A DNA stretch of 64,000 nt from Podarcis bocagei (GCA_964188305.1 OZ076885.1); one strand, 5' to 3'; positions 8,633 through 61,822 are shown, counted from the first letter of the stretch. Notes: generated by a model from the sequence alone, not told the origin. Program-made: numbers and translations.

Positions 8633-8661
8633 GGGGGGAAATATAATGAGTGGGTTAGTAC

Positions 8662-10579: not shown

Positions 10580-11164
10580 CTGTGCAAGATCAGGAAGACA
10601 GAAATACATGGTGAGTGGTGACAGGACTGTGAAAGAATTTTAAGCAAGAGTGGACAATGCCTTGGTTTTCTGGTGCAATCATTAATCATGACTGGGGAGG
10701 GACTGAGGGGCAAAGATACACCAAACCCCTCCTAGAAATGGTGGGTAAGAAGCAGAGGAGACAGGTTTGTGTGTCAATCAGCATTGTGCAACTGTGCAGT
10801 GACTGCCTGGCTAGCAGACCCTACAGACAGCAACCATTGCCTACACTAGGCCCTGGAAGCCAGTAACAAATTGTACATTTGCATGGGACTGGTTGGGTCG
10901 CCTTCAGCCTCTACTGCTACCTCTTAACCATTTCTGGTATGGATGGGCTTTCTCCTCCCCACTTGATTATGATAGTCAGTGCCCCCCCCACTCTATCCAC
11001 TGCTGGCCTTAAACAAAAATAGTTAGAAGCTTAGCTAGCTTTAAGATTTTGCCAACGTAGCTATTAATTAATTACAAGGGAACTGACAAAGTTATTGGGG
11101 TGGTTCACAAGGATTAAAGAACAGGAGGTAAACATTTGGCACGCAATCCAGTATTAGCACTTAC

Positions 11165-11270
11165 AACTGCCTGGTATTTGCTGTGGTTGTCCTTGCATCT
11201 TGGCTCTGCACATTTGTCATGTTCCTCCCCTATTTCTTCACTTGAGAGAAATTCACTTAACTTTTGAACG
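11165..11270 (-). CDS. ABCC8: ABCC8 exon 13 (106 nt)
   Basis: VQKLSEFLSSEEIGEEHDKCAEPRCKDNHSKYQAV; tag/GTAAGT. Confidence 0.95.
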
Positions 11271-11361
11271 CTACAAAAAGAGGGGAAAGGTAGTAAATTG
11301 AGGAATACTTCTACATTGTGCCAGTTACAGTGACAGTGTGCATTTCAGAATTCCCACGGTA

Positions 11362-11587
11362 CAGTGGAACCTTGGTTCTCGAACAGCTTAGGTGATGAAC
11401 AAATTGGCTCCCAAAATGTGAAAACGCGGAAGTGTTCCGGTTTTCGAATGCCGAATGTCCAATGTGGCTGTCAGCTATTGTTTCTGGGCCGCCTGTGCCA
11501 ATCAGAAGCCGCACCTTGGTTTTCGAATGTTCCAGGACTCGAATGGACTTCCAGGATGGATTAAGTTCAAGAACCAAGGTTCTACTG
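11362..11587. mobile_element. Tc1/mariner (Tigger-like) MITE
   Basis: TIRs cagtggaaccttggttct/agaaccaaggttctactg; TA TSD. Confidence 0.85.
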
Positions 11588-11688
11588 TATAGATATTATT
11601 CTCAGAAGAAATCCTATAACTGTGCACAAAGCTGTAATAAAACTGTAAGTACAATCAGTGGGATCAAGGTCTAATGACTTAAACTTTA

Positions 11689-11716
11689 CATCATCATCAT
11701 CATCATCATCATCATC
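11689..11716. repeat. (CAT)n microsatellite
   Basis: Seen directly. Confidence 0.95.
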
Positions 11717-11991
11717 TTGTGGTGATACTACTTTTGTCAAAGGTGTCCTCACATTGATTCTCCCCCTGCACCTCAAAGCATATAATTCTGTATAATTTAT
11801 TGCATGAGCTGGGAATGCAAGAACATAGTGGCTATAGTGGCTGCATATGGGGTGGGGAAACTTACTATGGGATGGCCTTGAAAATCAATGTGTCTAATTA
11901 GAGTGCAAAAGCATTGGATGGATACCACAAGCTCTTAAACACTGCAGTAAGAAGCTTCATATGTAAGACAGAGGCACTCCGGAAACCCTAC

Positions 11992-12137
11992 CTTACAAGA
12001 GCTTTGACTGTGGATCTAACCACACTGGAGAGCAGGAACAGTGGTGTGACAAGGATGTGAAAGAGGGAGAGTGAAGCAAAGGCCACCGAGGGAGAAAAGT
12101 CAGCATTTTCAAACAGGTGGGCATGGACCACAAATGT
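11992..12137 (-). CDS. ABCC8: ABCC8 exon 12 (146 nt)
   Basis: [48 protein letters not shown]; aag/GTAGGG. Confidence 0.96.
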
Positions 12138-12462
12138 CTTTAAAAGAAAAGACAGCAAAACAAATTATTTCAGCCACCTCTTATATTAAAGGTACAAATG
12201 CAGTGAAAATATTTAGCTGCACTTCAAAAGCCCTAATGATCAGGAGGAGACATTATGCAGCTAAGCACTGCAAAATCTGTCAGGCAGACTTAATATACAT
12301 TTAAATATCAGCTATAAATACAACAATTATATAAGAGCTTTCCCCATTATAAAAACAAGTAAAGAAGAAAAGAATGCATATTGAAGAAATAGCATTATGT
12401 CCATCTGAAAGTCCAGAGCAGTATAAAGTTACTCTCAAAGATGCATCTTGGAGCAGAACTTA

Positions 12463-12709
12463 AAGGTAAAGATAAAGGGACCCCTGACCATTAGGTCCAG
12501 TTGTGGCCGACTCTGGGGTTGCGCCGCTCATCTCAATTTATTGGCTGAGGGAGCCGGCATACAGCTTCCGGGTCATGTGGCCAGCATGACTAAGCCGCTT
12601 CTGGCAAAACCAGAGCAGCACACGGAAACGCCATTTACCTTCCCGCCGGAGCGGTACCTATTTATCTACTTGCACTTTGACGTGCTTTTGAACTGCTAGG
12701 TTGGCAGGA
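12463..12709 (-). mobile_element. Sauria SINE, 5'-truncated
   Basis: Sauria body with (ACCTTT)-type tail; 13-bp TSD ggagcagaactta at 12450-12462 and 12710-12722. Confidence 0.9.
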
Positions 12710-12966
12710 GGAGCAGAACTTAGACAAGAGTAATATCGAAGGATGTTTGTGGTTGCCCTAGTACAATCTATGCATGGTAACAAAAGTCTCCAATTGGATT
12801 CCCTTACTGGATTGGCTCCTGCATGCATCAAAATGGTGCCATCTAAAGGAAAGTGTCAGTGGGAATGACCTGAATCCATTTCTTAGGTTCTGTAAGGCCT
12901 GTGTGTTGTAGAATAGAATCAATTACAGGGGAGATACACATCTTGTATGGAGATTACTTTCTAGAG

Positions 12967-13102
12967 GAGGCATCCCCAACCTGCAGCCCTCCAGATGTTT
13001 TGGCCTACAATTCCCATGATCCCTAGCTAACAGGACCAGTGGTCAGGGATGATGGGAATTGTAGTCCAAAACATCTGGAGGGCCGAAGGTTGGGAATGCC
13101 TG
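12967..13102. mobile_element. Palindromic hAT MITE, same family as 7548-7683
   Basis: Near-identical internal sequence (ccagatgttttgg...acaggaccagtggtcagggatgatggg). Confidence 0.85.
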
Positions 13103-13400
13103 TAATCTAGAGCTTTTGAAATAATGTGGTAACTGGTCTGTGTGTACTCAGCCATCATCACTCTGTCAGCTTACATAGTAAGAGGACAGGACATTCTAGA
13201 CTTAAATATACAAGCACAGGAGGATTTTGAGAGAACAGTGATACATGCTGCAAAATGTATCATTGGAGTGATGTCCATATTTAAGATCTAAACAGGCCAC
13301 CGAAGATCTAAACAGCAGTAAGATCTAAATATCAGTAAAGTGATATTACGGACATTCAAGAAAAATCTATTCATACGTAAATTAAGATAAGGTACAACAC

Positions 13401-13403
<3 letters not shown>

Positions 13404-13465
<62 letters not shown>
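13404..13465. repeat. (AC)n(AG)n compound microsatellite
   Basis: Seen directly. Confidence 0.95.
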
Positions 13466-13732
13466 TTCCCAAATAACAAATTGCTCTCCATTGTGATTTA
13501 ACTCTTCATGCTTTCTGTAATTAAACATCATTTTGTGTCACATCTATTTCAGTTTTCAAATGCATCTGTTGAAGGACAAGATAGCAGTACATAAAGTTAA
13601 TATTTTATTAGTAGAGTAATTTAAAATGAACTAGAGAAGGAATAATGCATTTGTAACCGACAGAGGGCTTTGTAGCTACACTCTTCTCTAAATGTTAAAA
13701 TATATCTACATTTTTAACAGTAAAATACTTAC

Positions 13733-13773
13733 TATAAGAACAGCTGCAATAGGTATTGCTGCATTCATGAAAA
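13733..13773 (-). CDS. ABCC8: ABCC8 exon 11 (41 nt)
   Basis: (I)FMNAAIPIAAVLI; cag/GTAAGT. Confidence 0.95.
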
Positions 13774-14216
13774 CTGCAAGTAAAACAAATATATTTTACC
13801 GATTATTTCAATATACTTAGGCTTCATACATCTCTACATGCACTTCACTTTTGTATCTATAACAGTTCTTTCTGGTTTTCTTTTTCTTTTTATCTGCCTA
13901 GGTTTCATCCTGTCTTGTTTGGATGCTGCCCTTTTAGTTAGGATATACTGGAACTGTCATTATAGTGTTTTGAGTTAGTGGGGGATCCCCAGATCCCTGG
14001 GTGTCAGGTCCCCCCCTCCTAGATTCTTGGATGCTGGGGTTTAATCAGAGCTGAAAAGCTGAGCTTGTTTTTCTGTCAGACAGAGGGACAAAGGGAGATG
14101 ATGGCCCTGTCATTAATCCATCTACAAGACAAAAGACCCTGCAGGTAAACAAGGCGGAGGTTGTCAGGGCAATGTGGGTGTGATGCGGCCACACAGAAAA
14201 AGCTGTCCCTTTACAC

Positions 14217-14406
14217 CAGGCATGTCCAAAGTCCATTTCGGGGGCCTAATCCGGTCCGCTGGTCAACTTAATCCGGGGGTAATTTTTTTTTAAAAAAGCT
14301 CAGCAACGTCAATCCTAAAAAAGACTCAACAACTTTGGTCGGCCCTCACGCATGTTCACTTCATCATCAAATCTGGCCCTCTTTGAAAAAAGTTTGGGTA
14401 CCCCTG
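14217..14406. mobile_element. hAT MITE
   Basis: cagg...cctg termini; 8-bp TSD ctttacac. Confidence 0.85.
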
Positions 14407-16533
14407 CTTTACACAGATGGGTTTTTTTTGGCAAGGTTTTATAGGAACAAGGAGGAGGAAATAGGGAGGAGGCTGGGGGCCATAACTTTGGATCCAAGCT
14501 CACTGAAGCTATGAGAGAAGCAATGAGGGACACTCCTGGCATGTAGTGCTCTTCACCCCCTCCACTGAAGGTTCCAGGTGTTTTTGCTGGCATCCATCTG
14601 CCTCAAGAGACAATGGAGTGCACCTCTGGGGCTGAAGTCAAACCACCCTGTTAAAGTGACTGTAAATATGTGTAAACTAAACCAGACATTAGCTCCACAG
14701 TGCCTTGATTCCACAATGGAAACTCAATACAGGGCGAGTGCCTGGTACCTCCTGGAATTTTGCTACCACTCAGCAGAGATTGGGGGGGCATGTAATAATA
14801 CAAATGAAAAATGGCAATAAAATAAAAAGTAGTCATTTCCTGGAAACATTGACCTGACCGTCTGTGTACCCAGAACACAATGGCTTTCCTGCTGTGCCTA
14901 GTCAAATCACTGTAGTGTTTAGAGGTTATTATCCCCAGATGGCTGGGGAATGGAACAAATGCTTTTTTGCCTTGGGTTCACTTTTAAATTTGTCATTAAC
15001 AAAAATTATCTCCTGTAGTGTGACTAATTATTCCTTCATAAGCATTGCCCAAACTTCTTACTAATTTGAGCAAGCAGTAACCATGTCTAATTACTCAATG
15101 TATCTCAACAACACAATGCATTTCTGGCGTTTTGTTTGACTTCTTGGTTCATTCTGTAATCTTGTTGCAGCAGCTAAATATAAACAGGAAATGTTTCAAA
15201 ATTGAGTGAAATTAGCTGCAGATTGTGCAGAATGAGAGATCATCATCAGCAATACAATCCTTCAGTCTTCAGTAATAATATAAACATGAATCTCAATGTC
15301 CTTTGATTTGATTATGTATTATTTTACATGATCATCATCCATAAAATTGGAGTTTCCACATCACTGTTCACACTTACTTGGAAATAAGCCAATTGAACAT
15401 CTGAATAGACATGCATATAGGACTAACTGCACATAAATCAGAGCATGGTGTCAGCCTCTCAGATCAGCTTGCCATCAGTTCAGAGCTGCCAAGCACTCAT
15501 ATTGAAAGCTGGCACCATATGCCCATGTGGATGGTAAGGGTGGGGGCTCTGAATAATTGCTTAATTTGTACTGTCATTTAAACATTATTTATTGTGTATG
15601 GTTTGGGGCAATCTATATGGTAAGAGTAAACTTTATGTGCCCTCGTGTGAACTGGTCCAAATTCTTGTTGGGTGTGTGTGTATTTACATGGTAGCATGGT
15701 TCCAAAGGAAGCTCCTCCTGGCATGCATATACTTTTCAGGACAGGCATATGTGGGCAGACATTTAAATATTGCATCAGGGAAGAGAGTTTCAGCCACCAG
15801 CCGCAGGCATTTAAATTGGCCCTCAGAGGCTTGCCAGGAAATGCAAATCAATTACTGTACTATTAAATGTTTGTCTCCTCGTTTTCACATTATTTCTTTA
15901 AGAACTTGAGATTCTTCCAGACTTGGTTTCACTGGCAAATGCAAAACACAAATGCAAAACCACTATAAATTATGGATTGTAAATGAAACACAATTTACGT
16001 CTATCACTCTATTTATACCTTGTTAAGTGGGGGGAAAACAACTATTTCTGTCTCCCTTACAGTATCAAATTCTGAACTGGTATGAAACCAGTTTTTCCTT
16101 CAGTGACAGTCCTGATTTAAATAAGCAAGTGACACTGACTAGTGACTCAGCTATACAGCTGCAACTAAAAATATATATAAAAATAAAAAAGTTGTCCAGT
16201 AGCACCTTAGAGACCAACTAAGTTTGTTCTTGGTATGAGCTTTCGTGTGCATGCACACTTCTTCAGATACTGACTAAACTAAAGCTGCAACTAAGCTGCT
16301 ACTAAAACATTTTGTGTGTGTTTTAAGTGCAATATACAATGTGACACTGGATGGCAATGGTGAGCATTATGGAAAATTCAATGTGTTTTTAAAAAAGCAC
16401 TCTCATAATGGTTTTTATATGTATGCAGGTTCCACCTAAGTGAGATGCTGCTGGACTAAGGCTGGAGGAAATGTGCTTATAGCTAAAAAATAATGAGGCC
16501 AGTGACTTCATGCTCAAACCTGCCATATGAGTA

Positions 16534-16771
16534 CAGTGGTACCTTGGTTCTCGAACTTAATCCGTTCGAGTCCTGAAACCATTCGAATACCAAGGCGTGT
16601 CTTCCAATTGGCTGCAGGAATTTCCTGCACTCAAGCAGAAACTGTGGAAACCGTGTCAGATGTTCAACTTCCGAAAAACGCTTACGAACCAGAACATTTA
16701 CTTCTGGGTTTGCGGTGTTCGGGAGCTGATTTGTTCGACAACTAAGCCGTTTGGAAACCAAGGTACCACTG
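16534..16771. mobile_element. Tc1/mariner (Tigger-like) MITE
   Basis: TIRs cagtggtaccttggtt/aaccaaggtaccactg; TA TSD. Confidence 0.88.
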
Positions 16772-16944
16772 TATAAATTTTGTTCATAACTTAAGGCTGT
16801 GATCAGGCCCCAAACACAGAGAGAACCATACGCACATACAGTTTGTATGAGGGTGGCCTCTGTTCCTACCTTAAAAGGAAGATGCATATGTCAATGGGCA
16901 TGGCCTACTGCTGTGCTTCTGTTCACAGCCAAACATACTCACTG

Positions 16945-17247
16945 GGGGCTCATCCAGACCTCCTTTTGCACCAGACTTTCTAGGCACATGTCTGAGCTTT
17001 AAAATTCTGTGTCCAAACAGTTTTTTGTTTTGTCCTGGCAGTTTCCCCGGACAACTGGCATTTTATCACTGAATCGGAGCCAATGGCAATCCATAGAAAA
17101 TCGGATTGCCCTTTGCTCTGATTCAGCATTAAAACATGGGTTTTCCTGGCGAAAGGACTAGGACAACAAAACCAAACTAAACCCTGGAGCTTTAAAGCCT
17201 GGGCATGTGCCTAGAAACGTAGCACAAAAGGAAGTCTGGATGAGCCC
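16945..17247. mobile_element. GGG-terminated palindromic MITE (Harbinger-like)
   Basis: gggctcatccagac ... gtctggatgagccc; related copies at 1697-1910 and 30011-30251. Confidence 0.65.
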
Positions 17248-18238
17248 TAGCACTGAGTGGATCAACTGAAAAGGACTTTAATCGTCAAGGCCATAGTGAG
17301 CAGCTCTATACTATTTGTGGCAACCATTTCTGTCTCAGATACACCCATGTTATATGGCACAGAGGCTGGATCTAGACACATCCAAAAAGAGGTTTCAGGA
17401 AAATGTGTTGAAAACCTCATAATGGGAAATCATGTTGGCGAAAGACAGAAGTCTACAGCACCATCTGGTGTCACAGTGTTATAACGCATTTAAAATGCCC
17501 CCCCCCTTTAAACTAATGTAGCTGAGTCCAGACACATAATTGTGACATTTAAAGAATGAGGTAGAAATAATATGTGAAATCTTTAATTTATCATTATGGT
17601 CCCATGTTATATCTTACAAACATTTCTATACTGCCTTCATTAAAAACAATCCCATAAAATAATAACCCCATTAGTATTTTGAATCAAGATTTAGTGTCAT
17701 AAATTTATGACACTTGTGCTACTTCAATATGCTGAAACTTTAAAGCAATGCTTTTCAAAAAGCAGAGACATGTAAGGGCAGTACATTCCAGGAACCTTTA
17801 CCAACTATCCTTTTCTCATGGGAGTCAGCTACATGGATTTATTTTTCCTTCTTTGACCTCAACTGCTCAGAAAGTATTAACTATACTGCAAAGGGCATAG
17901 GAAAGTCAGAGGCTAGGGTATATATATGGTGCTTGGACACGGACCTTTAATTCAGGGGCTGTGCCTGGAGAGAGTGGAGGAAGGGTAAGAATAGATAAAC
18001 CCAAACTCTAGTTCAGACTCTAGTTCCTGCATTCAGTTGCCAGGAGGTTCAATACTTAAATGGACTGCATAAACCTTTTCCAAACACAATAAAATGTATT
18101 TGTGCTACTGGCAGTTCTGTTGGTATATTAGAACTGGAAATAGACTCTAAAAGCTGCAGCACCTTTAAATGGCATGTACACTCATAGTTATACTGAGACA
18201 AAAACTGATACTGGGACAAAGTCAAGCAATATACTTAC

Positions 18239-18401
18239 TTGATATGGAGGTATAGAGAGCAAAAGCTCTGAGGCTAGTCATTTCTTTTTGCCGGGTTTCC
18301 TCCACACTGCTGTGAAATATGTGTTCCCAGGCGTAGAGCTTAAGGAGTTTTATGCCTCGAAGCATTTCATTTGTTTTCTTAAGCCTCTCATTGGAATATT
18401 C
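18239..18401 (-). CDS. ABCC8: ABCC8 exon 10 (163 nt)
   Basis: [29 protein letters not shown]...AFALYTSIS; cag/GTAAGT. Confidence 0.97.
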
Positions 18402-18510
18402 CTGAACCATTGACACAAACATTAATTTAAGGAGGATTATTGCAACACTGCAATACTTATCTAAGGATACACACTATGCTAATACAAATTGACTACAGAT
18501 GTTCTTGCAT

Positions 18511-18759
18511 GCCAGTGTGGTGTAGTTGTTAAGAGCGGTAGTCATGTAATCTGGGGAACCGGGTTCGCGTCTCCACTCCTCCACATGCAGCTGCTGGGTG
18601 ACCTTGGGCCAGTCACACTTCTTTGAAGTCTCTCAGCCTCACTCACCTCACAGAGTGTTTGTTGTGGGGGAGGAAGGGAAAGGAGATTGTTAGCCAATTT
18701 GAGACTCCTGAAGGGGAGTGAAAGGCGGGATATCAAATCCAAACTCTTCTTCTTCTTCT
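18511..18759 (+). mobile_element. tRNA-derived squamate SINE with L2-like 3' end and (TTC)n tail
   Basis: A box tggtgtagttgttaagagc, B box gggttcgcgtctcc, core ctgggtgaccttgggccagtcac, simple-repeat tail. Confidence 0.8.
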
Positions 18760-18908
18760 ATACACAATATAGAACTTGCGTGTTCTGCTTTCCAGTAAAA
18801 CCCATTACTTGCTCTTCAGTTTCACTTTGATATCTCTGGATGGGAGGTTATCCTTGCACATGGAAGTATTTATGTGTACAATTTTAAAGATTTTTATGCT
18901 GCCTTTCA

Positions 18909-19298
<390 letters not shown>

Positions 19299-19759
19299 TT
19301 AAGGGATAGAATTTTAGCAATCCATTAGTCCCAAATCTGACTCAAAAGTCTCATAAACTCCAAATCTTCATTGAGACATTACTACAAACAACACTTTTGG
19401 GGGTGAACTACTGTTAAAAATCAAAATGATTCACTCAATATACAAGATTTTATAGGTTGTGGAGATATTTAGGAAAAGAGTTTGAAATTCCCTGAAGCAA
19501 ATGATGTTGATTTTAAAATCTAAAATTTGCTCTAGATATCAGTCGTAGCAGCAGGCAGCATCTCCTGATTTCATTCATTCAGCTACCCATTAGGATAGGA
19601 GTAACAAAAACAATCTATCATTCAAATGGAACCCTGAGGCTGAGAGATCCAGCTTGCTTCTGAATAGTGAGTGGGAAGCTAAACTATTCCTCCCTGCACA
19701 GCCACCTTCCCTTCAAAACAAAAGTGGCAAACATTTGTTTGAAAGCATGCTTAAGAGCA

Positions 19760-19928
19760 TGTAGTCTGGCTCAGCGGTAGAGCATCTGCCTTGTATGCCG
19801 AAATTTCAGATTCAGTCCCCAGCATCTCCAGGTGGGACTGGGAGAAGCATCTGTCTCAAACTCTGGAGAGCATCTGCCAGTCAGGGTAGACAATACTGAG
19901 CTAGCTGGACAAATGGCCTGACTGTATT
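19760..19928 (+). mobile_element. tRNA-derived SINE (Squam3-like), degraded
   Basis: tggctcagcggtagagcatctg head; ...gtagacaatactgagctagctggac body. Confidence 0.7.
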
Positions 19929-20921
19929 CACCAAAGACAAAAGCATTTTTAGATTGCATGTTCTCAAAAACCACAAGAAGTTCAGATTTTAACTGTCCCA
20001 GTTGACACCTGTCCCATTGTATGTCCATATACATGTACAGTCGTACCTCAGAAGTTGAACGGAATCCATTCTGGAAGTCCGTTCAACGTCTGAAATGTTC
20101 GGAAACCAGTTTCCAAAAGAACGTTCAAAAACTAACACTCACTTCAGGTTTTCGATCGTTTAGGAGCCGGAACAACATTAATAGTTGAAATATAGCAGAC
20201 GTTGGTGAGGTAGCAGAGGCAATGAATAAAAATAGGCAGCTGCCACTTATTGACATCCAAGGGTTAAGGCAGCCACCATATTTTTACCTCTTTCAGACTA
20301 AAAGGGCAATGCAAACCCCAACTACTGAGTGGTGATGTTTTTCAGAACACTGTGGCCACTGCCATATCTGCAGTCCTGCTATCAATGGTGGTTGGGCAAG
20401 AAGAGCAGAGGTAGGACCATCCGTGAGCCATGACTGGACCCAATGCTCTCATGCGATGGCAGCCAAACTGGCTCAGGAGCCAATGGCTCCAAGTCGGGCT
20501 CAACCCCTTCCCCATTCTTTCTTTAGAAGGCCCCATTTGGTGGCTTTCTGCTGGCTGCTGCTGGAAGTGATCCTGCTGGTGGCACTTTCACCCACCCTTT
20601 TGGTGGAAGGCCACCTTAGCCAGGCAGAGGCAATTCTGCTTCAGCTCAGTACAAGGGCTTATTACTGTTACTATTACTATTATTATTACTCTGCAATTTG
20701 ATGACAAGGAGCCACAGCTTTGTTTTTTTCCTCAGGTTATTTTCAATAACAACAATTTTTTTAAATAGATGTGCATTTCCCCAGCAACAATATTTTGAAT
20801 ATCATGAGTCTCTATATCCCAGTCTCTATATCCTACACAAGTACTCTGTTGTGCCACATACTGATACCCTGTAATAACTCTCACACACCAAATTTATCTC
20901 CATTTACATGGACTAAAGTTA

Positions 20922-46820: not shown

Positions 46821-48062
46821 CTGAAAAAGAAAATACAAAGCAAATGAACAAGAACATTTCTGGCTTAATTACAGAAGCATTTACTACTCAGCAATGTGGA
46901 AGATCAAACTAGAGAATTTAATGAAGGCAGCAATTTTGGGTAGGGGAAACTATGCCATACCATACCAAAATAATGTTACAGGATCGGGGGGCTGATGCCT
47001 GTGGATCCCAACCAAGTCTGTGATTAAGTATCTATAATATTCTAGTGTACACTAGAAGGAACTGCTAAATTGTTTAAACCAGTTTGCTAAGTTAATGGCC
47101 CTAGCTTGGCCTGTAAGCATTCTATCGGCATGGCTAAATAGTTGGCCATGTTGCTATGTAAGCAAGTAGCTGGTGATACCTTTCCAGGAATAGTAATGTT
47201 CCCCTCCCATTACCTGGCTAGATGCCGTGTCATCTTGGGGGGTAGGAGAACAATAGGCTAGGGAGCTTTTAAGCTGAAAACTTTAAAAGAGCCACAGAGG
47301 CTTGATTTGCTCTGTGTGCTGAATCCAAAGCAGTGCTGCCGAGTTGCGCCCAACATTGGGGTGTGTGTGTGTGTGTGAGCGTTGCGTGTGCATGATGTCA
47401 CATGAACAATGCCCCCCCATCCACCCAGGCCAACACAGCCCACCATCCTCCACCTACCCACTGCCAGCTGTCTTACCTTGTGTAAGGGATATGTGGGGCA
47501 AAGATGCTTTGCCCTGCACGTTCCCGGCAGAGACCACCAACGCACCTTTAGCCAAATTCACACAGGGCTGACTTGGGGAGGGTGGCGTGAGCAGTGTGCC
47601 CCCCACCCAAAGTGCACCCAGGGCAATCGCCCTGGTTTCAGCCCCCACACTACACTCCTGATGAGAAGGCATATAATTTTTGCCAATTCCCCCCTCTCTG
47701 TTAAAGCCCTACGAATCATCTTCAGAGAGTTGGTGAACCCTCTGGAACAGCATGGGTGGTGGCATGGGGAGAAGGTTGCAGAAGCAGAGGGAAATTTGTA
47801 AAAATAGCTTCCCTCCCCACTGTAAAAAGAGAAAGCCTCAGTTCCTTCAGCAGAGGAATGCTACTGAATACAAACACAACTATTAACAAAGTATTTATAC
47901 ATTTCCAACAAGTAAATAATAGATATCTGCCTCAAGAATTCCATTGCTTAAAAATGAGCTTTGTAAGGTTTGAAAGATTGCAAAAAAATGTCAGCGTAAC
48001 TGTTTAATCAAATGAGTGACATGATTTCATCTTTTCTCTTGTTCTCGATCAAAGCTACCCAC

Positions 48063-48162
48063 CATGCTTGTCTGCAGCACCACCTTCATAAATAGCAGAA
48101 ACCACTATTTTTCCAATTGGTGAATTGATGCCTCCTTCTACTGCAAGATCTAATGATCCTTC
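48063..48162 (-). CDS. USH1C: USH1C exon ~24 (100 nt, PDZ3)
   Basis: [33 protein letters not shown]. Confidence 0.97.
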
Positions 48163-48511
48163 CTGTTAAGAAAAATGTAATTCAGAAAAGATGAAAGAAA
48201 AGCACCTTTGTGAAAAGGAACGTATTGTTCAGCCTTTAAGAGTTTTCAGAAGTAAAGCCAGTATCTACTTAAATAAATAAACAAATCAATAGCACTGATG
48301 GAAGTGGTTTTTGGGCATGGGCCAAATCCTTCAATAACATCTGGTGTTGGGAGAAGAAATTTTGGGTCATTCAGTGTGAGAGAGTGACTGTTGAACTTCA
48401 TCACCAGCAAGTTTCATTTTAAAACGAGCACTGGTGCCACATTGCATATCCCAACAAAGAAACTGCCTCCTAAAGTTTTACCAGTTATCATTCTTCCATC
48501 ACAAACATTAC

Positions 48512-48565
48512 CTTCTTTATGCGCAGAAGTCGCACATCTTTCCCCATAATCTGATCAGGTGAAAA
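48512..48565 (-). CDS. USH1C: USH1C exon ~23 (54 nt, start of PDZ3)
   Basis: FSPDQIMGKDVRLLRIKK. Confidence 0.96.
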
Positions 48566-48597
48566 CTAGCAGAAAATCAAGAAACACGAGTTAGTCA

Positions 48598-49150
48598 TCA
48601 AAATTAAAAGACGCCTGCTTCTTGAGAGAAAAGCAATGACAAACCTAGGCAGCATCTTAAAAAGCAGAGACATCACCTTGCTGACAAAGGTCTGTATAGT
48701 TAAAGCTATGGTTTTCCCAGTAGTGATGTATGGAAGTGAAAGCTGGACCATAAAGAAGGCTGATCGCCGAAGAATTGATGCTTTTGAATTATGGTGCTGG
48801 AGGAGACTCTTGAGAGTCCTGTGGACTGCAAGAAGATCAAACCTATCCATTCTTAAGGAAATCAGCCCTGAGTGCTCACTGGAAGGACAGATCCTGAAGC
48901 TGAGGCTCCAATACTTTGGCCACATCATGAGAAGAGAAGACTCCCTGGAAAAGACCCTGATGTTGAAAAAGATTGAGGGCACAAGGAGAAGGGGACGACA
49001 GAGGACAAAATGGTTGGATGGTGTTCTTGAAGCTACCAACATGAGTTTGACCAAACTGCAGGAGGCAGTGGAAGACAGGAGTGCCTGGTGTGCTCTGTTC
49101 CATGGGGTCACAAAGAGTCGGACACGACTAAATGACTAAACAACAACAAC
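48598..49150 (+). mobile_element. Bov-B (RTE) LINE, 5'-truncated 3' fragment
   Basis: ORF 48636-49139 is the Bov-B C-terminus (KAMVFPVVMYGSESWTIKKADRRRIDAFELWCWRRLLRV...); (CAA)n tail. Confidence 0.95.
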
Positions 49151-49325
49151 TTTTTCAAATGCAAAAGACAAATTACTTAATGTGAAGCATGCATCTTAAA
49201 ACAGAATGTAGGCACTTCTAGATATAATCAATGCAGAACATGCCCTTTGTAGGTCTCTGCATTAGTTTCTGCCTTAGTTCAGAAAGCTAAAAATGGTACC
49301 TGTGTCAAAAGGCAGCGCAAAGCAT

Positions 49326-49811
49326 GTTGTTGTTATTGTTGGACCAGAGCACGCCAGGCACTCCTGTCTTCCACTGCCTCCCGCAGTTTGGTCAAACTCA
49401 TGCTGGTAGCTTCGAGAACACTGTCCAACCATCTCGTCCTCTGTCGTCCCCTTCTCCTTGTGCCCTCCATCTTTCCTAACATCAGGGTCTTTTCCAGGGA
49501 GTCTTCTCTTCTCATGAGATGGCCAAAGCTTCACGATCTGTCCTTCCAGTGAGCACTCAGGGCTGATTTCCTTAAGAATGGATAGGTTTGATCTTCTTGC
49601 AGTCCACAGGACTCTCAAGAGTCTCCTCCAGCACCATAATTCAAAAGCATCAATTATTCGGCGATCAGCCTTCTTTATGGTCCAGCTTTCACTTCCATAC
49701 ATCACTACTGGGAAAACCATAGCTTTTACTATACGGACCTTTGTTGGCAAGGTGATTTCTCTACTCTTTAAGATGCTATCTAGGTTTGTCATTGCTTTTC
49801 TCCCAAGAAAA
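49326..49811 (-). mobile_element. Bov-B (RTE) LINE 3' fragment, inverted relative to the neighbouring copy
   Basis: Same protein motifs on the minus strand, (CAA)n tail, TSD gcaaagcat at 49317-49325 and 49812-49820. Confidence 0.95.
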
Positions 49812-49861
49812 GCAAAGCATAAGAGATATCAAATGGCCTATACTAGTAAACGTCTCCTTAC

Positions 49862-49903
49862 CATTGTGTAGGGATCAAAGTCTTCCACATACTTCTGGAA
49901 GCC
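49862..49903 (-). CDS. USH1C: USH1C exon ~22 (42 nt)
   Basis: GFQKYVEDFDPYTM; cag/GTAAGG. Confidence 0.93.
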
Positions 49904-52190
49904 CTGCAAATAAAACTGGTAATCAAATACATGCATAGGAAACAGTAAATGGGGAGAGGGTGCTCCTAGATGAGCAAAGCCAGAAAAGAAATGAGATGGT
50001 GACATATCAGACAGTTTGTTAACGTTCCTCCTGACAGTCAGAAGACATACAGAGAGATTCCAACTGTTTAGGATGTAATAGTCAAATAAAATTGTTCTAG
50101 AGAAGTTTCCTTAGTCTTAGCTATTGACAGGTTACTTTTGTCTATGGATAGTGAAGGCTACATGCAGATGACGTATTTTGCTGAACTCCACTAGCATAAT
50201 TAAGGGAGAGTTGCAGGCTCTCGGCAGAGGTTCAGCAATATACGGAAGGAGTAAAGCTAAGATGGAACTGGCAAGTTGGCTGCTACAAAGCAGAAAAACA
50301 AAATAAAGAAGAAAACATTCCTTTAAAGTTTTTATTTAATTGAACATGCATCCACATTCATCTCTTCAGTGCATGCATAACTTTTTAACTGCCTGTCTAA
50401 AGCAAATCCAGCTCATTTTACTGCACATCAAGACTGCTCCTCTTAAACAACAGGGGGGGGGGTGGTGAGACTGTATGGCTTTGGTTGTCTTCTGGTCTAA
50501 CCTTGTCTAGAATCCATGTGCCCGTTTCACACACATCTAACACTGATCCACAATGGACATGCTTACATGTATTAAAATCAAGCACATATACCAGTGATTA
50601 ACTCACCCTAGTGGGATGATAAGCATGATAAATAGGATGGTAAACACATTGGGATAGTCCTATTTTATTAATTTCAGTGTAGTTTTAGGCATGTCAAACC
50701 TTCTCATTGTTGACCCCGCTCCCTTTATTAACTCATTTGGGCCAGTTTTAGATTTCTGGTTTCAGGGATCACAGATTCTAAATTTGTTGTTTGGGGAATA
50801 GCTATGTTCACAAAGCACTTTACTTGCAAATAGTACAACTCTGACATAATATGGTTTATAAAAATGAATTCTGTAAAGAAGATAAAAATGAAAGTGATCT
50901 GGGCAGTCTTTATATATTAGAAAGAAATATTCTGAACAAATGTCTTAGAACTGGGAGTTGTAATTTGAGTGGAACCACTGATTCATGGTGTGATTTAAAG
51001 CAAATCACTTCATCTTCCTTAACCTCAGTGTCAGTTTCATAACAAACAGATGTTGTCCCTGAAGAATACTTTCCTGGGAAAATATGTTTTAAGAAAGAGT
51101 AAATACAATACCTTTAAACAAACACAGGCTGGATCCAATAAACAAATCATTACCACTCCAGAATAAACACTGTGAAATGCATTTAGTGTTTCTGGGAAAA
51201 GTGTCACCAAACTGTTTTCATTGTGTACTACTAACAGGTGCACAACCACTGGGCATTGCTACATTAAAATTTAAATTGCAGATCTGGTACTGTACTTCTG
51301 CCTCATGGTGAAAGGAGAGAACATTAGCAGACTGGTTCCAAGTAGGAAGGCAACAACTTTATTCTCATATTTTAAAACCACATCATTTGGCCCTGTGAGT
51401 TTGTTTGTTTTAATAAACCAAAACAAATAATCAGCATGGGTAGGGTGGGGGAAAGCAAGGTCAGGACTGTGGAGTGGGGGAAGAGGTGCTTTAACCCTTT
51501 GCCAAATCAGGGCCAATAAAGCTCCCATTGATGTCTTAAAATATCATCAGTATTTTTAGTGCTTGTAATTAGAACCAAACTACACAAGGTGTTTTTCATG
51601 TACTTTGGCCTTTAGTGCAAACTTTTTTCTTTCACTAATTACCACTGTAGGGATCCCCAGTCCAGACTGGTACTTTGGTGCAGGGTTTGGGGGCCGTTAA
51701 GCTTTATCCTGCAGCTCTAGTCCCAACCTGGACTGGGCCTCTCTTCACCCGCAATCTGTATCAGGGCATGGAGCTCCCATTTGTTTAAATTGGAGCTTTT
51801 TCTCCCAATGCAAATTGCAGGTGCAGGGGCTCTGATCAGAACTACAGAAGGGGGCAAAGGGTTGGATGCCACATCATGGTCTTAACGCGTAATCCTCCCC
51901 AGAGTGGTGATTTGTGATAGAAGCAGCTTTCACTTGGGAACAAACTACATGATAAACATTATGTATGACCCCTAGTTTCTTAATATGCTAGCAGGAGTTG
52001 GATGCATTCATCAAGAGAGTATAAAGCTTGACTAAGATAATAATCTTAATCCATTATTATTTTAGAAAGCTATACTGTGTCCTTATTCCAAATGACAACG
52101 GGGGGGGGGGATAAAGAGAGGGAGAATGCTAGTATCAAAGCACAACTGAAACACCAAAATGCCACACAAACAAAGAAATTGTTATTTTAC

Positions 52191-54749: not shown

Positions 54750-55173
54750 AATTTAGTAGTTGATCATTAATGTGCTACTCAGAAGCACATTCATGTTTGA
54801 TTCTCAGATGTTATGAACATTTGCTCAAGCAGCCACCCTTTTTCTTACACAAATATGTAGCAGAAAAACACACACTCAGTTGACTAATATAAGCTGTACA
54901 AATGTCTCCATGAAGCACAATAGGATTTCCAGAAATGTGCAAAAGACCACACTGGGGCGGGGGGGGGGGGCGGAAGAGGACAAGCATGATAAGACCATGT
55001 TCTAAAATGGGCTTATCTTTTCTTTTGTGGGGGAGTGGGGATGCTGCAGTACAATATCATGCAGAGCAAAACTCACAGTGGAATATGTATATTTTCTGTT
55101 GACAAACTCAAACAGAAGCAGGAGGTGGTTGGGTTTGCCACAGATGCAAAACATATTCCATACTATGTCATAC

Positions 55174-55680
55174 CTTTGGATTGGATAAATAGGTCTGCTC
55201 ACTGGTCTGAGAACTAATTGGACTAAAGCTCCTTCCCTTGTAGCTTTTCATTTCCCAGTCATTCATTGAGTCTGCTGGCCCATTAGGCTGATAGCTGTGG
55301 CTGCCCATCCTTTCTTCCAAGTGAGTAGGCACAGGATGGAGAGTTGGAGCAGGAGGGGATGGGGGAGAAGATGGGGGTGACAGGGAAGGAGGTGCAGCGT
55401 GCACCCAGGAAGGAGGAGGCAATGTAACCCATGATGCTGCAGGAGAGGGCATTGGAGGCGGTCCCCTAGGAGCTGGGACACTTGGTGGAGGAGGTGGGTA
55501 AGTGCCTGGGAATACAGGAGTTGCATGGGGCAACGGAGGCGGAGGTGCTGGGCGTTTTGGAGGCTTGCCAACATCATCTAAGCTGATATCGTCAAGGTCA
55601 GTGGTGTGGAGCTGCAAACCACCAGCAAACCTCCGCACAGATGTAGCAGAAGGAGAAACAGCGGGACGTACACCTGTTGT
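55174..55680 (-). CDS. USH1C: USH1C exon ~19 (b-specific PST domain, 507 nt)
   Basis: TTGVRPAVSPSATSVRRFAGGLQLHTTDLDD...proline-rich...NPK; tag/GTATGA. Confidence 0.94.
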
Positions 55681-56462
55681 CTAATAACAAAAAAATCTGT
55701 TTTAACGTAGCACTTGCTTAAAACTACCTGAATACATCCTCACTAAGAGCAAGCAACGGAGCACAAGGCCGCCTGCTGCTATAAGAACATTTCATTTCCA
55801 CGCAGTGCCAATTGTCCGATTGGCCCACATATCAATACGTCACAATTCAGGTCAAAGGGAACCAGTATTTGTGACAGCAAATCCTACAGCTGAAAGAGAC
55901 ATTTCAAGAAGGTAAGAGCAATCCGTGGAAGCAAAATTAAAAGAAAAAACCTGGCTTCCCAACAGATATTTATATTGCAAGTGGTATAATTTAAGACTCC
56001 ACACTCACACGGTTGCATACATGTTTATAAATTAGAAGGGATAGAAGACATTGCAAAAACTTATACTGTTCATTTATTTGTGGTAAAATTGCGGGAAAGT
56101 ATCTCCAGCAGTGGTCAGAGATGATGGGAATTGTAGTCCCAAAACACCTGGAGGGCCGAGTTTGCCTATCCCTGTTTTAAAGGACTAAGTATCAGTAGAA
56201 GTTACTGCTGGGAAGCTAGGCTTTTGTTCCAATTCTGCTTCACTTGAGTGCCTTTACCTTCTTAAAATGTCTTTCCTTAGAGAAAGGGCATCTATTTCTT
56301 TGAATGAATTTGAAACTCTCCCCACCATGTAAACTGAACGAGTGAGACTACTAGAGACAATACTGCTAACTGCATCTGTAAAATAGTTTGTTGATCAAAA
56401 AAAGAAAACAAAGACAGGCATTTTGGATATCTCAATAGGTGAGGATCAGAGCATGATTTTAC

Positions 56463-56579
56463 CTCAGGAGAATCATTCTCCACAGAGGAGATTTGTTCTA
56501 AACGTGTTTGACAAAGCCTTTCCACCCAGTGCTGAGTTTTTTCTGATTCCGTTAAATCTTCTCGTTCAGTCTCAGATAC
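56463..56579 (-). CDS. USH1C: USH1C exon ~18 (b-specific, 117 nt)
   Basis: VSETEREDLTESEKTQHWVERLCQTRLEQISSVENDSPE. Confidence 0.96.
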
Positions 56580-57068
56580 CTGAGTCATATCACAGTTGCA
56601 GAAGAAAGTGTAAAGCTATTGTTACAGATATATAATTCATATTCAATTGCGCAAAATGAATTTCCCTGTTAAAAATGTTGTGCACAGATAAAAACATTAT
56701 TGTAATTCATCTCCTTTTCCAATCTCTATAGTCTCTGTGCAAAAGGCATCATGTATTAAAAGTTACAGGCATGCAGTCCTAGAAAGCATAAACACATGAC
56801 CAGTTGTGTCTGTTCACTACATCTGGAGGGCAGAGTTTGCCTATGCCTGGCATAGTGCCATTAGCCAATCAAAGAGGACCAAAGCTAAGCTTTTAAATTA
56901 TGATAATCACTTTTTGCTGTCTAGCTTGAGTTCTTGAACTACACTGTTGATGTGATTTTTAAAATTTTCATATATCTGAAGTTATTTGCCTATGTAAATA
57001 CTCAAATACCACCCATATTTCCTCCCCCCCAGGAATAAATGGCATCAGAACATGTTAAAAGAACATAC

Positions 57069-57221
57069 CTCTTGTACAAGCCGGTTGATTTTCAGCTGCT
57101 TTTCTCTTTCTAGCTTCTCTTCCTTTTCCTTGAGAAGCTTTAGCTCAAACTCCAGCTGCATTTTGCTCTTTTTCTGCTCACTGAGACTGTCACTTTTGGA
57201 TTTCTTTCTTTCTTTGCCTTT
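57069..57221 (-). CDS. USH1C: USH1C exon ~17 (b-specific, CC2, 153 nt)
   Basis: KGKERKKSKSDSLSEQKKSKMQLEFELKLLKEKEEKLEREKQLKINRLVQE. Confidence 0.95.
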
Positions 57222-60764: not shown

Positions 60765-61443
60765 CTACTAGAGAAACAGAGGAAGAAAGAAACAGAGGGG
60801 AAAAAGAAATGATAATACTTTGGGTGTTCCACACCGCCAATGAATTGGAAAGAATTGACACAAAGGGAGAGTCCCTGAAGAAGTTAAGCATGTTTTCTTC
60901 TGATTTAATTTTTGAGGAAGCTGAAGAAGCTTTCAATAGCTAAAGAAGAGAAGGGACTTACTGACAACTGACATCTCTGTATCATCCCATCTTATGTTTT
61001 AATTCATCAAGGCAGTGGAGGATTAAATTCAGTGCAAGTCACTTCCTTGTTCTCTCCATCCCTAGCCTTAGAGATACTACGCTAGTATTGGAAACTGTAA
61101 TCAGTATAATGAAATTGTGAGAGAAGAGTGGTCTCTTTACAAGTGCTATTTTGGAACACATATACCTAAATAGAGCTGAACAGAGACAGCTACACTGGTG
61201 TAATATGGAAGGAGAGCTGTGGCGGATTCATATAATGGAGCAAGCTGATTGATTCACTGGCTATATATTTGACAATCAGATGAACTCTATGGTTCAAGCA
61301 AGAACACTTATTTTTAAACACATATTCTATTCAAAAGGGACTGGGCATTATAGTGCTGTTTTGCAAACGAACCCCCTATTTCTGGACTCTGAAGGATTGG
61401 GCAGAAAGGATTCTGCAATGCTATTCTAGAATGAATTGAAATG

Positions 61444-61494
61444 CCATCCATCCATCCATCCATCCATCCATCCATCCATCCATCCATCCATCCA
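61444..61494. repeat. (CCAT)n microsatellite
   Basis: Seen directly. Confidence 0.95.
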
Positions 61495-61573
61495 TTACAG
61501 CCAGAAGCCACAACACAGCAGTGAAAATGATTCTATAATGATTCTGACTGTCCAAACAGTCAGGCAACCAGAA

Positions 61574-61822
61574 CAGTCATACCTTGGAAGTAAAACAGAA
61601 TCCGTTCCAGAAGTCCGTTCGACTTCCGAAACGTTCAGAAACCAAAGTGCGGCTTCTGATTGGTTGCAGGAGCTTCCTGCAGCCAACGGAAGCCGCGGAA
61701 GCCCTGTTAGACGTTCGGCTTCCAAAAATAGCTCGCAAACTTGAACAGTCACTTCTGGGTTTGCGGCGTTCGGGAGCCAAAACGTTCGAGAACTAAGCTG
61801 TTCAAAAACCAAGGTACAACTG
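61574..61822. mobile_element. Tc1/mariner (Tigger-like) MITE
   Basis: Same family as 11362 and 16534; partial relatives at ~20038-20170 and ~24275-24480. Confidence 0.82.

What the first reader, a model, noticed from the sequence alone, without database searches (positions are those of the whole stretch)
48566..49861. One USH1C intron almost entirely filled by an inverted Bov-B pair, predicting a ~480-bp pre-mRNA hairpin at the branch point
Seen: in transcript order, the 1.3-kb intron between the 42-nt and 54-nt exons consists of ~50 nt after the donor, a Bov-B copy (49811-49326), a ~175-nt spacer, an opposite-orientation Bov-B copy (49150-48598) and ~30 nt before the acceptor. A consensus-like branch point, TGACTAAC (minus, 48597-48590), abuts the element end. 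The two copies cover nearly the same part of Bov-B, look highly similar by eye, and are 5'-truncated within ~20 nt of each other. One has its own TSD, so it inserted independently. Inference: the pre-mRNA folds into a long duplex that brings donor and branch point together and is an ADAR substrate, a lizard analogue of inverted Alu pairs. Inverted arms may also drive gene conversion or deletion.
Basis: partly seen in the sequence, partly recalled or inferred. Interest (0 to 1): 0.7.

Follow-up and report, generated by a model that had tools for sequence, protein, structure and literature searches.

The report
Inverted Bov-B pair fills harmonin intron
Two copies of the same jumping-gene fragment sit head-to-head in one short intron of a lizard's USH1C (harmonin) gene and should fold the pre-mRNA into a ~470-bp double-stranded hairpin. 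A close relative lacks one copy, so this is a young, ordinary by-product of transposon insertion rather than a built-in splicing device.

Summary
The 1,296-nt USH1C intron (49861-48566, minus strand) holds a sense Bov-B 3' fragment (arm A, 49811-49326), a 175-nt spacer and an antisense Bov-B fragment (arm B, 49150-48601). TGACTAAC lies 3 nt beyond arm B and 25 nt before the acceptor.

- **Arms and fold:** the arms match at 94% over about 470 nt. Predicted MFE is -957 kcal/mol, against -375 +/- 7 for shuffles.
- **Independent insertion, shown directly:** arm A has a 9-bp target-site duplication. A DNA contig from a sample under a different organism code joins 49813 to 49317, which is the exact empty site, yet still carries arm B's tail. 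Another coded organism has both junctions.
- **Consequence:** the hairpin is lineage-specific and not conserved.
- **Likely gene conversion:** mismatches between the arms avoid a central 192 nt (1/192 against 26/278, P about 1e-5), while two lacertid paralogs diverge normally there.
- **Editing and splicing untested:** two RNA runs gave zero depth on the USH1C exons, spacer and flanks.

The kind is known (same-intron inverted Alus as in RABL5; hyper-edited LINE 3' fragments in chicken and lizard). The scan has noted other intronic inverted pairs in this genome (NFE2L1, ATGL, FKBP6), all unchecked.

The parts
49862..49903 (-). 42-nt USH1C (harmonin) exon, GFQKYVEDFDPYTM
   Evidence: Sequence read. 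Aligns to human harmonin chain 5mv8_B residues 6-20 (weak E because it is short, but contiguous with the next exon).
48566..49861 (-). The 1,296-nt intron (GT at 49861-49860, AG at 48567-48566)
   Evidence: MFE -957 kcal/mol against -375 +/- 7 for shuffles.
49812..49820 (-). Upstream copy of arm A's target-site duplication, ATGCTTTGC. It starts with A, is preceded by T, and has TTT 11-13 nt upstream.
   Evidence: The signature matches the Bov-B 'Tn-TA' pattern described in PMC13295347.
49326..49811 (-). Arm A: 5'-truncated Bov-B 3' fragment (486 nt), sense in the transcript, (CAA)n-like tail. It lacks about 34-38 nt of the canonical 3' end and 14 nt internally.
   Evidence: Paralog reads carry the missing 3' end at 49340 (table 7). 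The whole arm is absent in organism C: contig record 4 joins 49813 to 49317 (table 8).
49317..49325 (-). Downstream copy of arm A's TSD, ATGCTTTGC
   Evidence: Only one copy is left in the empty-site contig of X15.
49151..49316 (-). Unique spacer. Together with the TSD copy it makes the 175 nt between the arms, and it forms most of the 237-nt hairpin loop.
   Evidence: Unique-level depth in the DNA runs and zero depth in the RNA runs.
48601..49150 (+). Arm B: 5'-truncated Bov-B 3' fragment (550 nt), sense on the + strand and so antisense in the transcript. It keeps an open 180-aa ORF2 C-terminus (48597-49136) and a (CAA)3 tail.
   Evidence: 8,000 protein relatives; the best named ones are Podarcis and Zootoca RT-domain proteins at 86-89%. 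Its junctions are seen in organism D (5' end) and organism C (3' tail).
48619..49102 (.). Paired part of arm B. 48619-48906 pairs with 49522-49809, and 48914-49102 pairs with 49340-49528, with a 14-nt bulge near 48900-48913.
48702..48893 (.). Central near-identical tract of arm B (partner 49535-49726 in arm A). It has 1 mismatch in 192 nt and a longest perfect run of 121 bp. Candidate gene-conversion tract.
   Evidence: Permutation P = 2.8e-4. Fisher P = 1e-5 against the flanks. Paralogs L001 and L002 diverge 4.7-8.3% here. The arms share derived bases at 48740 and 48820/21.
48590..48597 (-). Branch-point-like TGACTAAC in unique flank DNA, 3 nt from arm B. The putative branch A is at 48591, 25 nt from the AG and 28 nt from the stem base.
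   Evidence: Motif only; not mapped experimentally.
48512..48565 (-). 54-nt USH1C exon, FSPDQIMGKDVRLLRIKK (in frame, 18 codons)
   Evidence: Aligns to harmonin chains 5xbf_B, 5mv8_B and 1v6b_A, E = 5e-5.
48058..48165 (-). Open segment holding the next exon (start of harmonin PDZ3); context for naming the gene
   Evidence: E = 8.8e-15 to 1v6b harmonin.

Best explanation
Two separate retrotransposition events put 5'-truncated 3' fragments of the lacertid Bov-B (RTE-clade) LINE into the same short USH1C intron, in opposite orientations. Arm B, antisense and 35 nt from the 54-nt exon, came first. Arm A, in the sense orientation, came later and is missing from a closely related sample.

After both were present, a stretch of at least 192 nt in the middle was probably homogenised by gene conversion between the arms.

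Once the pre-mRNA is transcribed through arm B, it is expected to snap into a hairpin of about 470 bp (94% paired, perfect core of 121 bp, 237-nt loop). By analogy with same-intron inverted Alus, this hairpin should be bound by dsRNA-binding proteins and hyper-edited by ADAR. It would leave only about 50 nt at each end of the intron single-stranded.

It is most likely a near-neutral by-product, not a selected splicing element.

Shown: the anatomy, arm similarity, predicted fold, TSD, presence/absence in relatives, and the non-uniform mismatch pattern. Inferred: folding in vivo, editing, any effect on splicing, and conversion as the cause of the central tract.
For: - Anatomy and splice sites. 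Exon identity.
- Arm similarity.
- Fold: -957 against -375 +/- 7 for shuffles; each arm alone only -124 and -131.
- Bov-B identity: ORF2 C-terminus with 8,000 relatives, best named in Podarcis and Zootoca. The (CAA)n tails and A-first TSD with an upstream T run match Bov-B_PMu in PMC13295347.
- Independent, later insertion of arm A: 9-bp TSD, plus X15 contig record 4 (585 nt, depth 21, the same depth as the neighbouring unique contig). That contig joins 49813 directly to 49317 and runs on to 49128, inside arm B's tail.
- X17 contigs start 26 nt inside arm A and reach 30 nt into arm B (table 8).
- Arm B is further from the paralog majority than arm A, mostly through CpG transitions.
- Conversion: 1/192 against 26/278 mismatches, normal paralog divergence in that part, and shared derived bases.
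- ADAR plausibility: 122,793 hyper-editing sites in lizard brain, about half of hyper-edited loci lie in long dsRNA formed with sequence within +/-2 kb, and LINE 3' fragments behave like SINEs (PMC5625713). 3.1% of cattle editing sites lie in BovB (PMC6380278).
Against: - There is no RNA evidence at all. Two bulk RNA runs (about 12% of each read) gave zero depth on the exons, spacer and flanks, so expression, folding and editing are untested.
- Helicases of the DHX9 type and co-transcriptional protein loading may keep the arms apart.
- The organism labels are coded. Flank divergence of X15 and X17 from the window is only about 0.5-1.5%, so 'related species' could be population polymorphism.
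- Arm B's 5' junction was not seen in X15; only 23 nt of its tail were.
- The central tract was defined after looking at the data. Only two lacertid paralogs were available as controls, and homogenisation during assembly polishing cannot be excluded.
Confidence: 0.72

Rival explanations
1. The hairpin is a functional splicing element. It loops out about 1.2 kb so that the donor and branch point lie about 80 nt apart. Alternatively, as with RABL5 Alu1 and Alu2, sense arm A was kept because it neutralises an exon-suppressing antisense element (arm B) sitting 35 nt upstream of the small 54-nt exon, and it masks cryptic splice-like motifs in arm B.
For: - Geometry: 52 nt from donor to stem, 28 nt from stem to branch A.
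- The topology is the same as in RABL5 intron 2: sense Alu1 upstream, antisense Alu2 24 nt from the exon. There the antisense copy alone causes exon skipping and the sense copy antagonises it, with the effect lost beyond about 68 nt (PMC2533698).
- Same-intron pairing favours linear splicing (PMC11263572).
- Arm B antisense carries pyrimidine-rich AG sites near 48957 and 48945 and a GTGAG at 48879.
Against: - A close relative carries the intron without arm A, so USH1C works without the pairing.
- There is no conservation or covariation to point to.
- A 1.3-kb vertebrate intron needs no looping.
- There are no RNA data.
- Insertion of a second Bov-B nearby is expected by chance at this copy density (52,041 hits per 1,511 Mb in P. 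muralis, PMC13295347).
Confidence: 0.1
2. The duplex does not form to any meaningful extent in vivo. Co-transcriptional packaging, helicases and fast splicing keep the arms apart, so the pair has no molecular consequence.
For: No RNA signal of any kind could be obtained. DHX9 is reported to destabilise intronic inverted Alus (PMC11263572).
Against: The energy gain is huge relative to local folds: -957 against about -255 for the two arms folded alone. Far weaker inverted Alu pairs are demonstrably edited in introns (PMC2533698), and lizard transcripts are heavily hyper-edited at loci that pair with sequence within +/-2 kb (PMC5625713).
Confidence: 0.2
3. The two arms are not independent insertions. 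They arose by inverted duplication, twin priming or an assembly artefact.
For: The 5' ends are nearly coincident (16-18 nt apart). These are the only two copies in 64 kb and they lie side by side.
Against: - Arm A has its own 9-bp TSD and its own tail, and there is a precise empty site in X15.
- The arms differ at 8-12% of bases in their flanks and carry different indels.
- Twin priming inverts adjacent parts of an element, not the same part.
- Independent contigs from two other samples reproduce three of the four element junctions.
Confidence: 0.03
4. The central near-identity is not gene conversion. It reflects both arms descending from one subfamily whose source copies were identical there, or lower mutability of that stretch.
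For: The arms' bases at 48740 and 48820 are carried by roughly 20-30% of the paralog contig depth in the DNA runs, so a sizeable subfamily has them. This stretch encodes the best-conserved part of the ORF2 C-terminus.
Against: Arm B has lost many CpGs in its 3' part but shows no private change in the central 192 nt. Lacertid paralog pairs diverge 4.7-8.3% there, as in their flanks (odds ratios 0.63-1.2, against 0.05 for A-B). The amino-acid differences between the arms look neutral (16 replacements from about 30 changes).
Confidence: 0.35

Closest known systems
Same-intron inverted Alu pair of human RABL5 intron 2 (Lev-Maor et al. 2008, PMC2533698)
   Same: A sense copy upstream and an antisense copy a few tens of nt before the downstream exon (24 nt there, 35 nt here), in one intron, able to base-pair. 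The pair arose by two independent lineage-specific insertions.
   Different: The elements are LINE 3' fragments of about 500 nt, not 300-nt SINEs. The duplex is longer and better matched (94%, perfect core of 121 bp). Editing and a splicing effect were shown for RABL5 and are untested here. The antisense strand of Bov-B has a (GUU)n end, not a U-run.
Hyper-edited dsRNA from oppositely oriented LINE 3' fragments (chicken CR1, lizard Penelope; Porath et al. 2017, PMC5625713) and BovB/Bov-tA editing in cattle (PMC6380278)
   Same: 5'-truncated LINE copies share their 3' part, so neighbouring inverted copies pair like SINEs. They are intronic and are ADAR substrates in reptiles and ruminants.
   Different: Those are genome-wide statistics with RNA evidence. 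This is one locus without RNA evidence. The paper names Penelope and SINEs as the main edited repeats in lizard (Penelope over 40,000 unique sites, all SINEs 8,663); Bov-B is not mentioned there.
Intron looping by complementary segments that shorten the donor to branch-point distance (yeast RP51B-type structures; from my own knowledge, not checked in a paper here)
   Same: Complementary blocks sit next to the 5' splice site and the branch point and would loop out the intron interior.
   Different: Those structures are short, conserved and required. This one is 470 bp, transposon-made and absent in a close relative.
Non-allelic gene conversion between neighbouring repeat copies (neighbouring Alus, palindrome arms; from my own knowledge)
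   Same: A tract of near identity with shared derived bases, bounded by diverged flanks, between two copies less than 1 kb apart.
   Different: Only two sequences and two paralog controls are available. The direction is unknown and there is no outgroup copy.

Membership tests
Bov-B (RTE-clade) LINE, 5'-truncated 3' fragments | Homology to the ORF2 C-terminal region of the LINE | tested here: met
   The 180-aa open frame of arm B finds 8,000 relatives. The best named ones are 'reverse transcriptase domain-containing' proteins of Podarcis muralis and P. lilfordi and a Zootoca protein at 86-89%; some hits carry PF00078. Pfam itself has no model for this C-terminal part. The name Bov-B rests on my knowledge of its ORF2 end and 3' terminus, and on the features in PMC13295347.
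Bov-B (RTE-clade) LINE, 5'-truncated 3' fragments | (CAA)n microsatellite-like 3' tail, as in lacertid Bov-B | tested here: met
   Both arms end in CAA repeats. Bov-B_PMu has (CAA)2-6 (PMC13295347).
Bov-B (RTE-clade) LINE, 5'-truncated 3' fragments | TSD that starts with A after a T, with a T run about 10 nt upstream | tested here: met
   Met for arm A: ATGCTTTGC, preceded by T, with TTT 11-13 nt upstream. Arm B has only an imperfect 12/15 direct repeat (48598-48612 and 49155-49169) that overlaps its 5' end.
Intronic inverted-repeat dsRNA / ADAR hyper-editing substrate (inverted-Alu-like) | Two copies in opposite orientation in one transcript, within about 2 kb, with long high complementarity | tested here: met
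   470 nt at 94%, 237 nt between the paired parts, all within one intron.
Intronic inverted-repeat dsRNA / ADAR hyper-editing substrate (inverted-Alu-like) | Clusters of A-to-G changes in RNA that are absent from DNA | tested here: inconclusive
   Two RNA runs gave zero depth on the exons, spacer and flanks. All listed differences on the arms either also occur in the DNA runs or equal the other arm's base, so they come from paralog reads.
Intronic inverted-repeat dsRNA / ADAR hyper-editing substrate (inverted-Alu-like) | Binding by dsRNA-binding proteins, or a dsRNA antibody signal | not testable with these tools
   Needs J2 or ADAR immunoprecipitation.
Structure-assisted splicing element (selected intron looping) | Complementary blocks adjacent to the 5' splice site and the branch point | tested here: met
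   52 nt from donor to stem and 28 nt from stem to the putative branch A.
Structure-assisted splicing element (selected intron looping) | Pairing conserved across related species | tested here: not met
   Organism C (X15) carries the exact empty site for arm A at unique-sequence depth (table 8).
Structure-assisted splicing element (selected intron looping) | Splicing depends on the pairing | not testable with these tools
   Needs minigenes, or RNA from carriers and non-carriers.
Non-allelic gene conversion between neighbouring repeats | A tract of near identity bounded by diverged flanks, beyond what paralogs show | tested here: met
   1/192 against 26/278 mismatches. Permutation P = 2.8e-4 and Fisher P = 1e-5. 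Five other paralog pairs give odds ratios of 0.63-1.2. The region was chosen after looking at the data.
Non-allelic gene conversion between neighbouring repeats | An unconverted state seen in an outgroup or in an animal lacking the partner copy | not testable with these tools
   Arm B's interior in organism C cannot be told apart from paralog contigs.

The most novel reading that the evidence does not exclude
The younger sense arm is a compensatory insertion. Antisense arm B, 35 nt upstream, weakens recognition of the in-frame 54-nt exon. Arm A's arrival sequesters arm B in a duplex (a RABL5-like antagonism). Gene conversion between the arms then keeps a perfect core of 121-192 bp. In that case carriers and non-carriers would differ in harmonin exon inclusion, giving a natural test of transposon-against-transposon rescue of splicing.
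Probability: 0.07. Interest if true: 0.55.

Novelty: new member of a known kind. Interest (0 to 1): 0.3.

Why it matters
This is a clean, well-dated example of two LINE 3' fragments turning an ordinary intron into a long, nearly perfect dsRNA hairpin. It lies in a conserved deafness and blindness gene, and close relatives with and without one arm give a natural "one arm deleted" control. That makes the effect of a large intronic duplex on ADAR editing and on a small neighbouring exon testable in lizards. It also gives a compact case for studying sequence exchange between inverted repeats. It does not reveal a new mechanism. From the published Bov-B copy number (about 1 per 29 kb in P. muralis) and assuming random placement, I estimate some hundreds to a thousand such close inverted pairs per genome. 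This is my own rough estimate.

Tried and rejected
1. **Rfam scan of 48300-50100:** only a sub-threshold snoZ118 match in the spacer (23.7 bits against a gathering score of 48, E = 0.25). Taken as chance.
2. **Pfam on the arm A open frames:** nothing real. This part lies C-terminal to the RT domain.
3. **RNA test for editing:** USH1C was not covered in either bulk RNA run.
   - The A>G and T>C excess on the arms is paralog variation. It is also seen in the DNA contigs, or it equals the other arm's base.
   - The RNA joints (49522 to 49702 with 17 extra letters; opposite-strand joints 48726/49522 and 48920/49702) must come from another expressed, rearranged Bov-B copy, because this locus has no unique coverage.
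4. **Origin by twin priming, inverted duplication or assembly artefact:** rejected, see the rival explanations.
5. **Orthologous USH1C introns from lacertid assemblies:**
Protein look-ups need an exact full product.
   - The length window of the word search excludes full harmonin.
   - P0004 was not on record.
6. **Larger paralog panel:** only two usable lacertid copies were obtained (L001, L002). L003 is a 77% relative in a metagenome contig.
7. **Clean TSD for arm B:** none found, only a 12/15 imperfect repeat.

Full report
**What is there**

On the minus strand the window carries the 3' half of USH1C (harmonin), followed by ABCC8 exons at lower coordinates.

- Three consecutive exon-bearing open segments align without a gap to solved human harmonin chains. 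The 42-nt exon (49903-49862) aligns to 5mv8_B residues 6-20. The 54-nt exon (48565-48512) aligns to residues 21-38 (E = 5e-5). The next exon aligns to residues 38-73 (E = 9e-15 to 1v6b).
- I searched these exon by exon.
- The intron between the first two exons runs 49861-48566 (1,296 nt), with GTAAGG at its start and a pyrimidine-rich CTAG at its end.

**Anatomy of the intron, in transcript order**

- 50 nt of unique sequence ending in ATGCTTTGC (49820-49812).
- Arm A (49811-49326, 486 nt): a Bov-B 3' fragment in the sense orientation with a CAA-type tail.
- The same 9-mer again (49325-49317), then the rest of a 175-nt spacer.
- Arm B (49150-48601, 550 nt): the same part of Bov-B in antisense.
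- 35 nt of unique sequence that begins, 3 nt after arm B, with TGACTAAC (48597-48590). Its putative branch A lies 25 nt before the AG.

Arm B's 5' end is fixed by paralog reads whose sequence continues past 48601 where the window's does not. Arm A's missing 3' terminus is shown the same way at 49340 (table 7).

**Are the arms alike beyond chance?**

- The repeat finder gives 288 nt at 95% plus 189 nt at 92%. blastn gives 443/484 with one 14-nt gap. A global alignment gives 454 matches and 32 mismatches.
- This is the only inverted pair of 80 nt or more within 5 kb in the 64-kb window, and the only two copies of this Bov-B part in the window.
- The intron folds to -957 kcal/mol with both arms zipped end to end. 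By comparison, 25 dinucleotide shuffles give -375 +/- 7, the arms alone give -124 and -131, and the intron without arm A gives -197.
- If the stem forms, it leaves 52 nt after the donor and 28 nt before the putative branch A.

**What the repeats are**

- Arm B still has an open 180-codon frame ending at the natural stop. A word search with it found 8,000 relatives. The best named ones are Podarcis lilfordi, P. muralis and Zootoca vivipara proteins at 86-89% identity, called reverse transcriptase domain-containing by their sources.
- The CAA tails and arm A's TSD match what PMC13295347 reports for Podarcis Bov-B. The TSD's first base is A, it is preceded by T, and there is a TTT 11-13 nt upstream.
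- The name Bov-B also rests on my own knowledge of its ORF2 end. Pfam has no model for this part.

**Origin and age**

I laid two DNA contig sets from differently coded organisms on 48400-50000 (table 8).

- **X15 (organism C).** One 585-nt contig at depth 21, the same depth as the neighbouring unique contig, matches 50000-49813. Its very next base matches 49317, and it continues to 49128. Exactly arm A plus one TSD copy (495 nt) is missing. This is the pre-insertion empty site. The contig then runs through the spacer into the last 23 nt of arm B.
- **X17 (organism D).** One contig starts 26 nt inside arm A and runs out through the TSD into the exon flank. Another runs from the 54-nt exon side 30 nt into arm B.

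So arm B was there first, and arm A is a later, independent insertion that is not shared by all close relatives.

- Flank divergence of both samples from the window is only about 0.5-1.5%. This may be between-species difference or polymorphism, and the labels are coded.
- In line with this order, arm B differs from the paralog majority at more places than arm A, mostly by CpG transitions.
- Twin priming, inverted duplication and assembly artefact are therefore rejected.

**An unexpected pattern: probable gene conversion**

- The 27 mismatches in the paired core are not spread evenly. 48702-48893 has 1 in 192 nt, while the flanks have 26 in 278. The longest perfect run is 121 nt.
- Random placement gives a stretch of 192 nt or longer containing at most one mismatch with P = 2.8e-4. 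Fisher's test gives P = 1e-5 (the region was chosen after looking at the data).
- The stretch is not intrinsically invariant. Against two lacertid paralogs fetched from public assemblies (L001 Zootoca, L002 P. lilfordi), each arm differs by 4.7-7.3% there, and the two paralogs differ from each other by 8.3%. This is much as in the flanks (odds ratios 0.63-1.2 against 0.05).
- Inside the tract the arms share bases that differ from both paralogs and from most paralog reads (48740; 48820/21, one CpG decayed to TG in the arms and CA elsewhere).
- I read this as a conversion tract between the arms, at about 60%. The alternative is a shared subfamily.
- Two controls are few. The direction cannot be told, and homogenisation by assembly polishing is not excluded.

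**Does it fold, get edited or affect splicing?**

This could not be tested.

- The two bulk RNA runs of organism A (about 12% of each read) put thousands of reads on the arms but none on the exons, spacer or flanks (table 2). So USH1C is not seen in these samples.
- Every listed base difference on the arms is also present in the DNA contigs or equals the other arm's base. These are reads of other Bov-B copies.
- The RNA joints listed belong to some other rearranged, expressed copy.

The inference therefore rests on precedent:

- Lizard brain has 122,793 hyper-editing sites (98% A-to-G), and about half of hyper-edited loci pair with sequence within +/-2 kb.
- 5'-truncated LINE 3' fragments such as chicken CR1 behave like SINEs in forming dsRNA (PMC5625713).
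- In cattle, 3.1% of editing sites lie in BovB (PMC6380278).
- Pairs within one intron favour linear splicing (PMC11263572).

**Closest known case**

Human RABL5 intron 2 has the same topology: a sense Alu upstream and an antisense Alu 24 nt before the exon. There the pair is edited. The antisense copy alone causes exon skipping, the sense copy counteracts it, and the effect fades when the antisense copy is moved more than about 68 nt away (PMC2533698).

By analogy, arm B (35 nt from an in-frame 54-nt exon) might weaken that exon and arm A might relieve it. I give this 7-10%. It is speculation until RNA from carriers and non-carriers is compared.

**Verdict**

The structure, the independent insertion and probably the conversion hold. 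Editing and splicing effects are plausible but untested, and a selected function is unlikely because the pairing is absent in a close relative.
- The kind is known, so this is a new member of it.
- With about one Bov-B hit per 29 kb in P. muralis (PMC13295347), close inverted pairs should be common genome-wide (my rough estimate). The scan has noted other intronic inverted pairs in this genome (s1-345303, s1-359668, s1-340379), all unchecked.

Noticed in passing
window 1-20000 (minus strand), e.g. 7836-8060 and 471-620: Open segments with ABC-transporter Walker A and signature-like motifs (GQVGCGKSS; [14 protein letters not shown]) lie downstream of USH1C. This looks like ABCC8 (SUR1), the same gene order as human 11p15.1. 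The identification is from memory of the motifs and was not checked with a tool.
   Followed up: no
window 55171-55680, 56295-56615, 57048-57221 (minus strand): Open segments that look like the harmonin isoform-b-specific parts: a proline-rich PST stretch and a lysine/glutamate-rich coiled-coil stretch.
   Followed up: no
window 49194-49293 (minus strand): A sub-threshold Rfam match to the C/D-box snoRNA family snoZ118 in the hairpin loop (23.7 bits against a gathering score of 48, E = 0.25). Most likely chance.
   Followed up: partly
window 48598-48612 and 49155-49169: An imperfect 12/15 direct repeat brackets arm B and overlaps its first 12 nt. It may be a degraded TSD with microhomology at the 5' junction of the truncated insertion.
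   Followed up: partly
window 49522 / 49702 and 48726 / 48920 (reads of X23 and X24): RNA reads show a 179-nt skip with 17 extra letters (95 reads in X23, one direction only) and opposite-strand joints. With no coverage of this locus's unique parts, they must come from another expressed, rearranged Bov-B copy elsewhere in organism A.
   Followed up: no
window 49656: Nearly all RNA reads of organism A carry C where the window has A (+ strand), while no DNA contig of organisms C or D does. This is either a private change of arm A or a Bov-B variant specific to organism A.
   Followed up: no
window 61317-61576 (minus strand): A tetranucleotide microsatellite that reads as repeated MDGW in translation, in a USH1C intron.
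   Followed up: no
L003:9966-10965: A 51-kb contig of an ENA metagenome assembly carries Bov-B-like sequence at 77-81% identity to the lizard arms. This is presumably host (animal) DNA in a metagenome. Thousands of 'ena' protein hits at about 75% identity look the same.
   Followed up: no
window 48879-48957 (minus strand, inside arm B antisense): Pyrimidine-rich AG sites near 48957 and 48945 and a GTGAG at 48879 could define a 65- or 77-nt cryptic exon. In the hairpin these motifs would be buried in the duplex.
   Followed up: no
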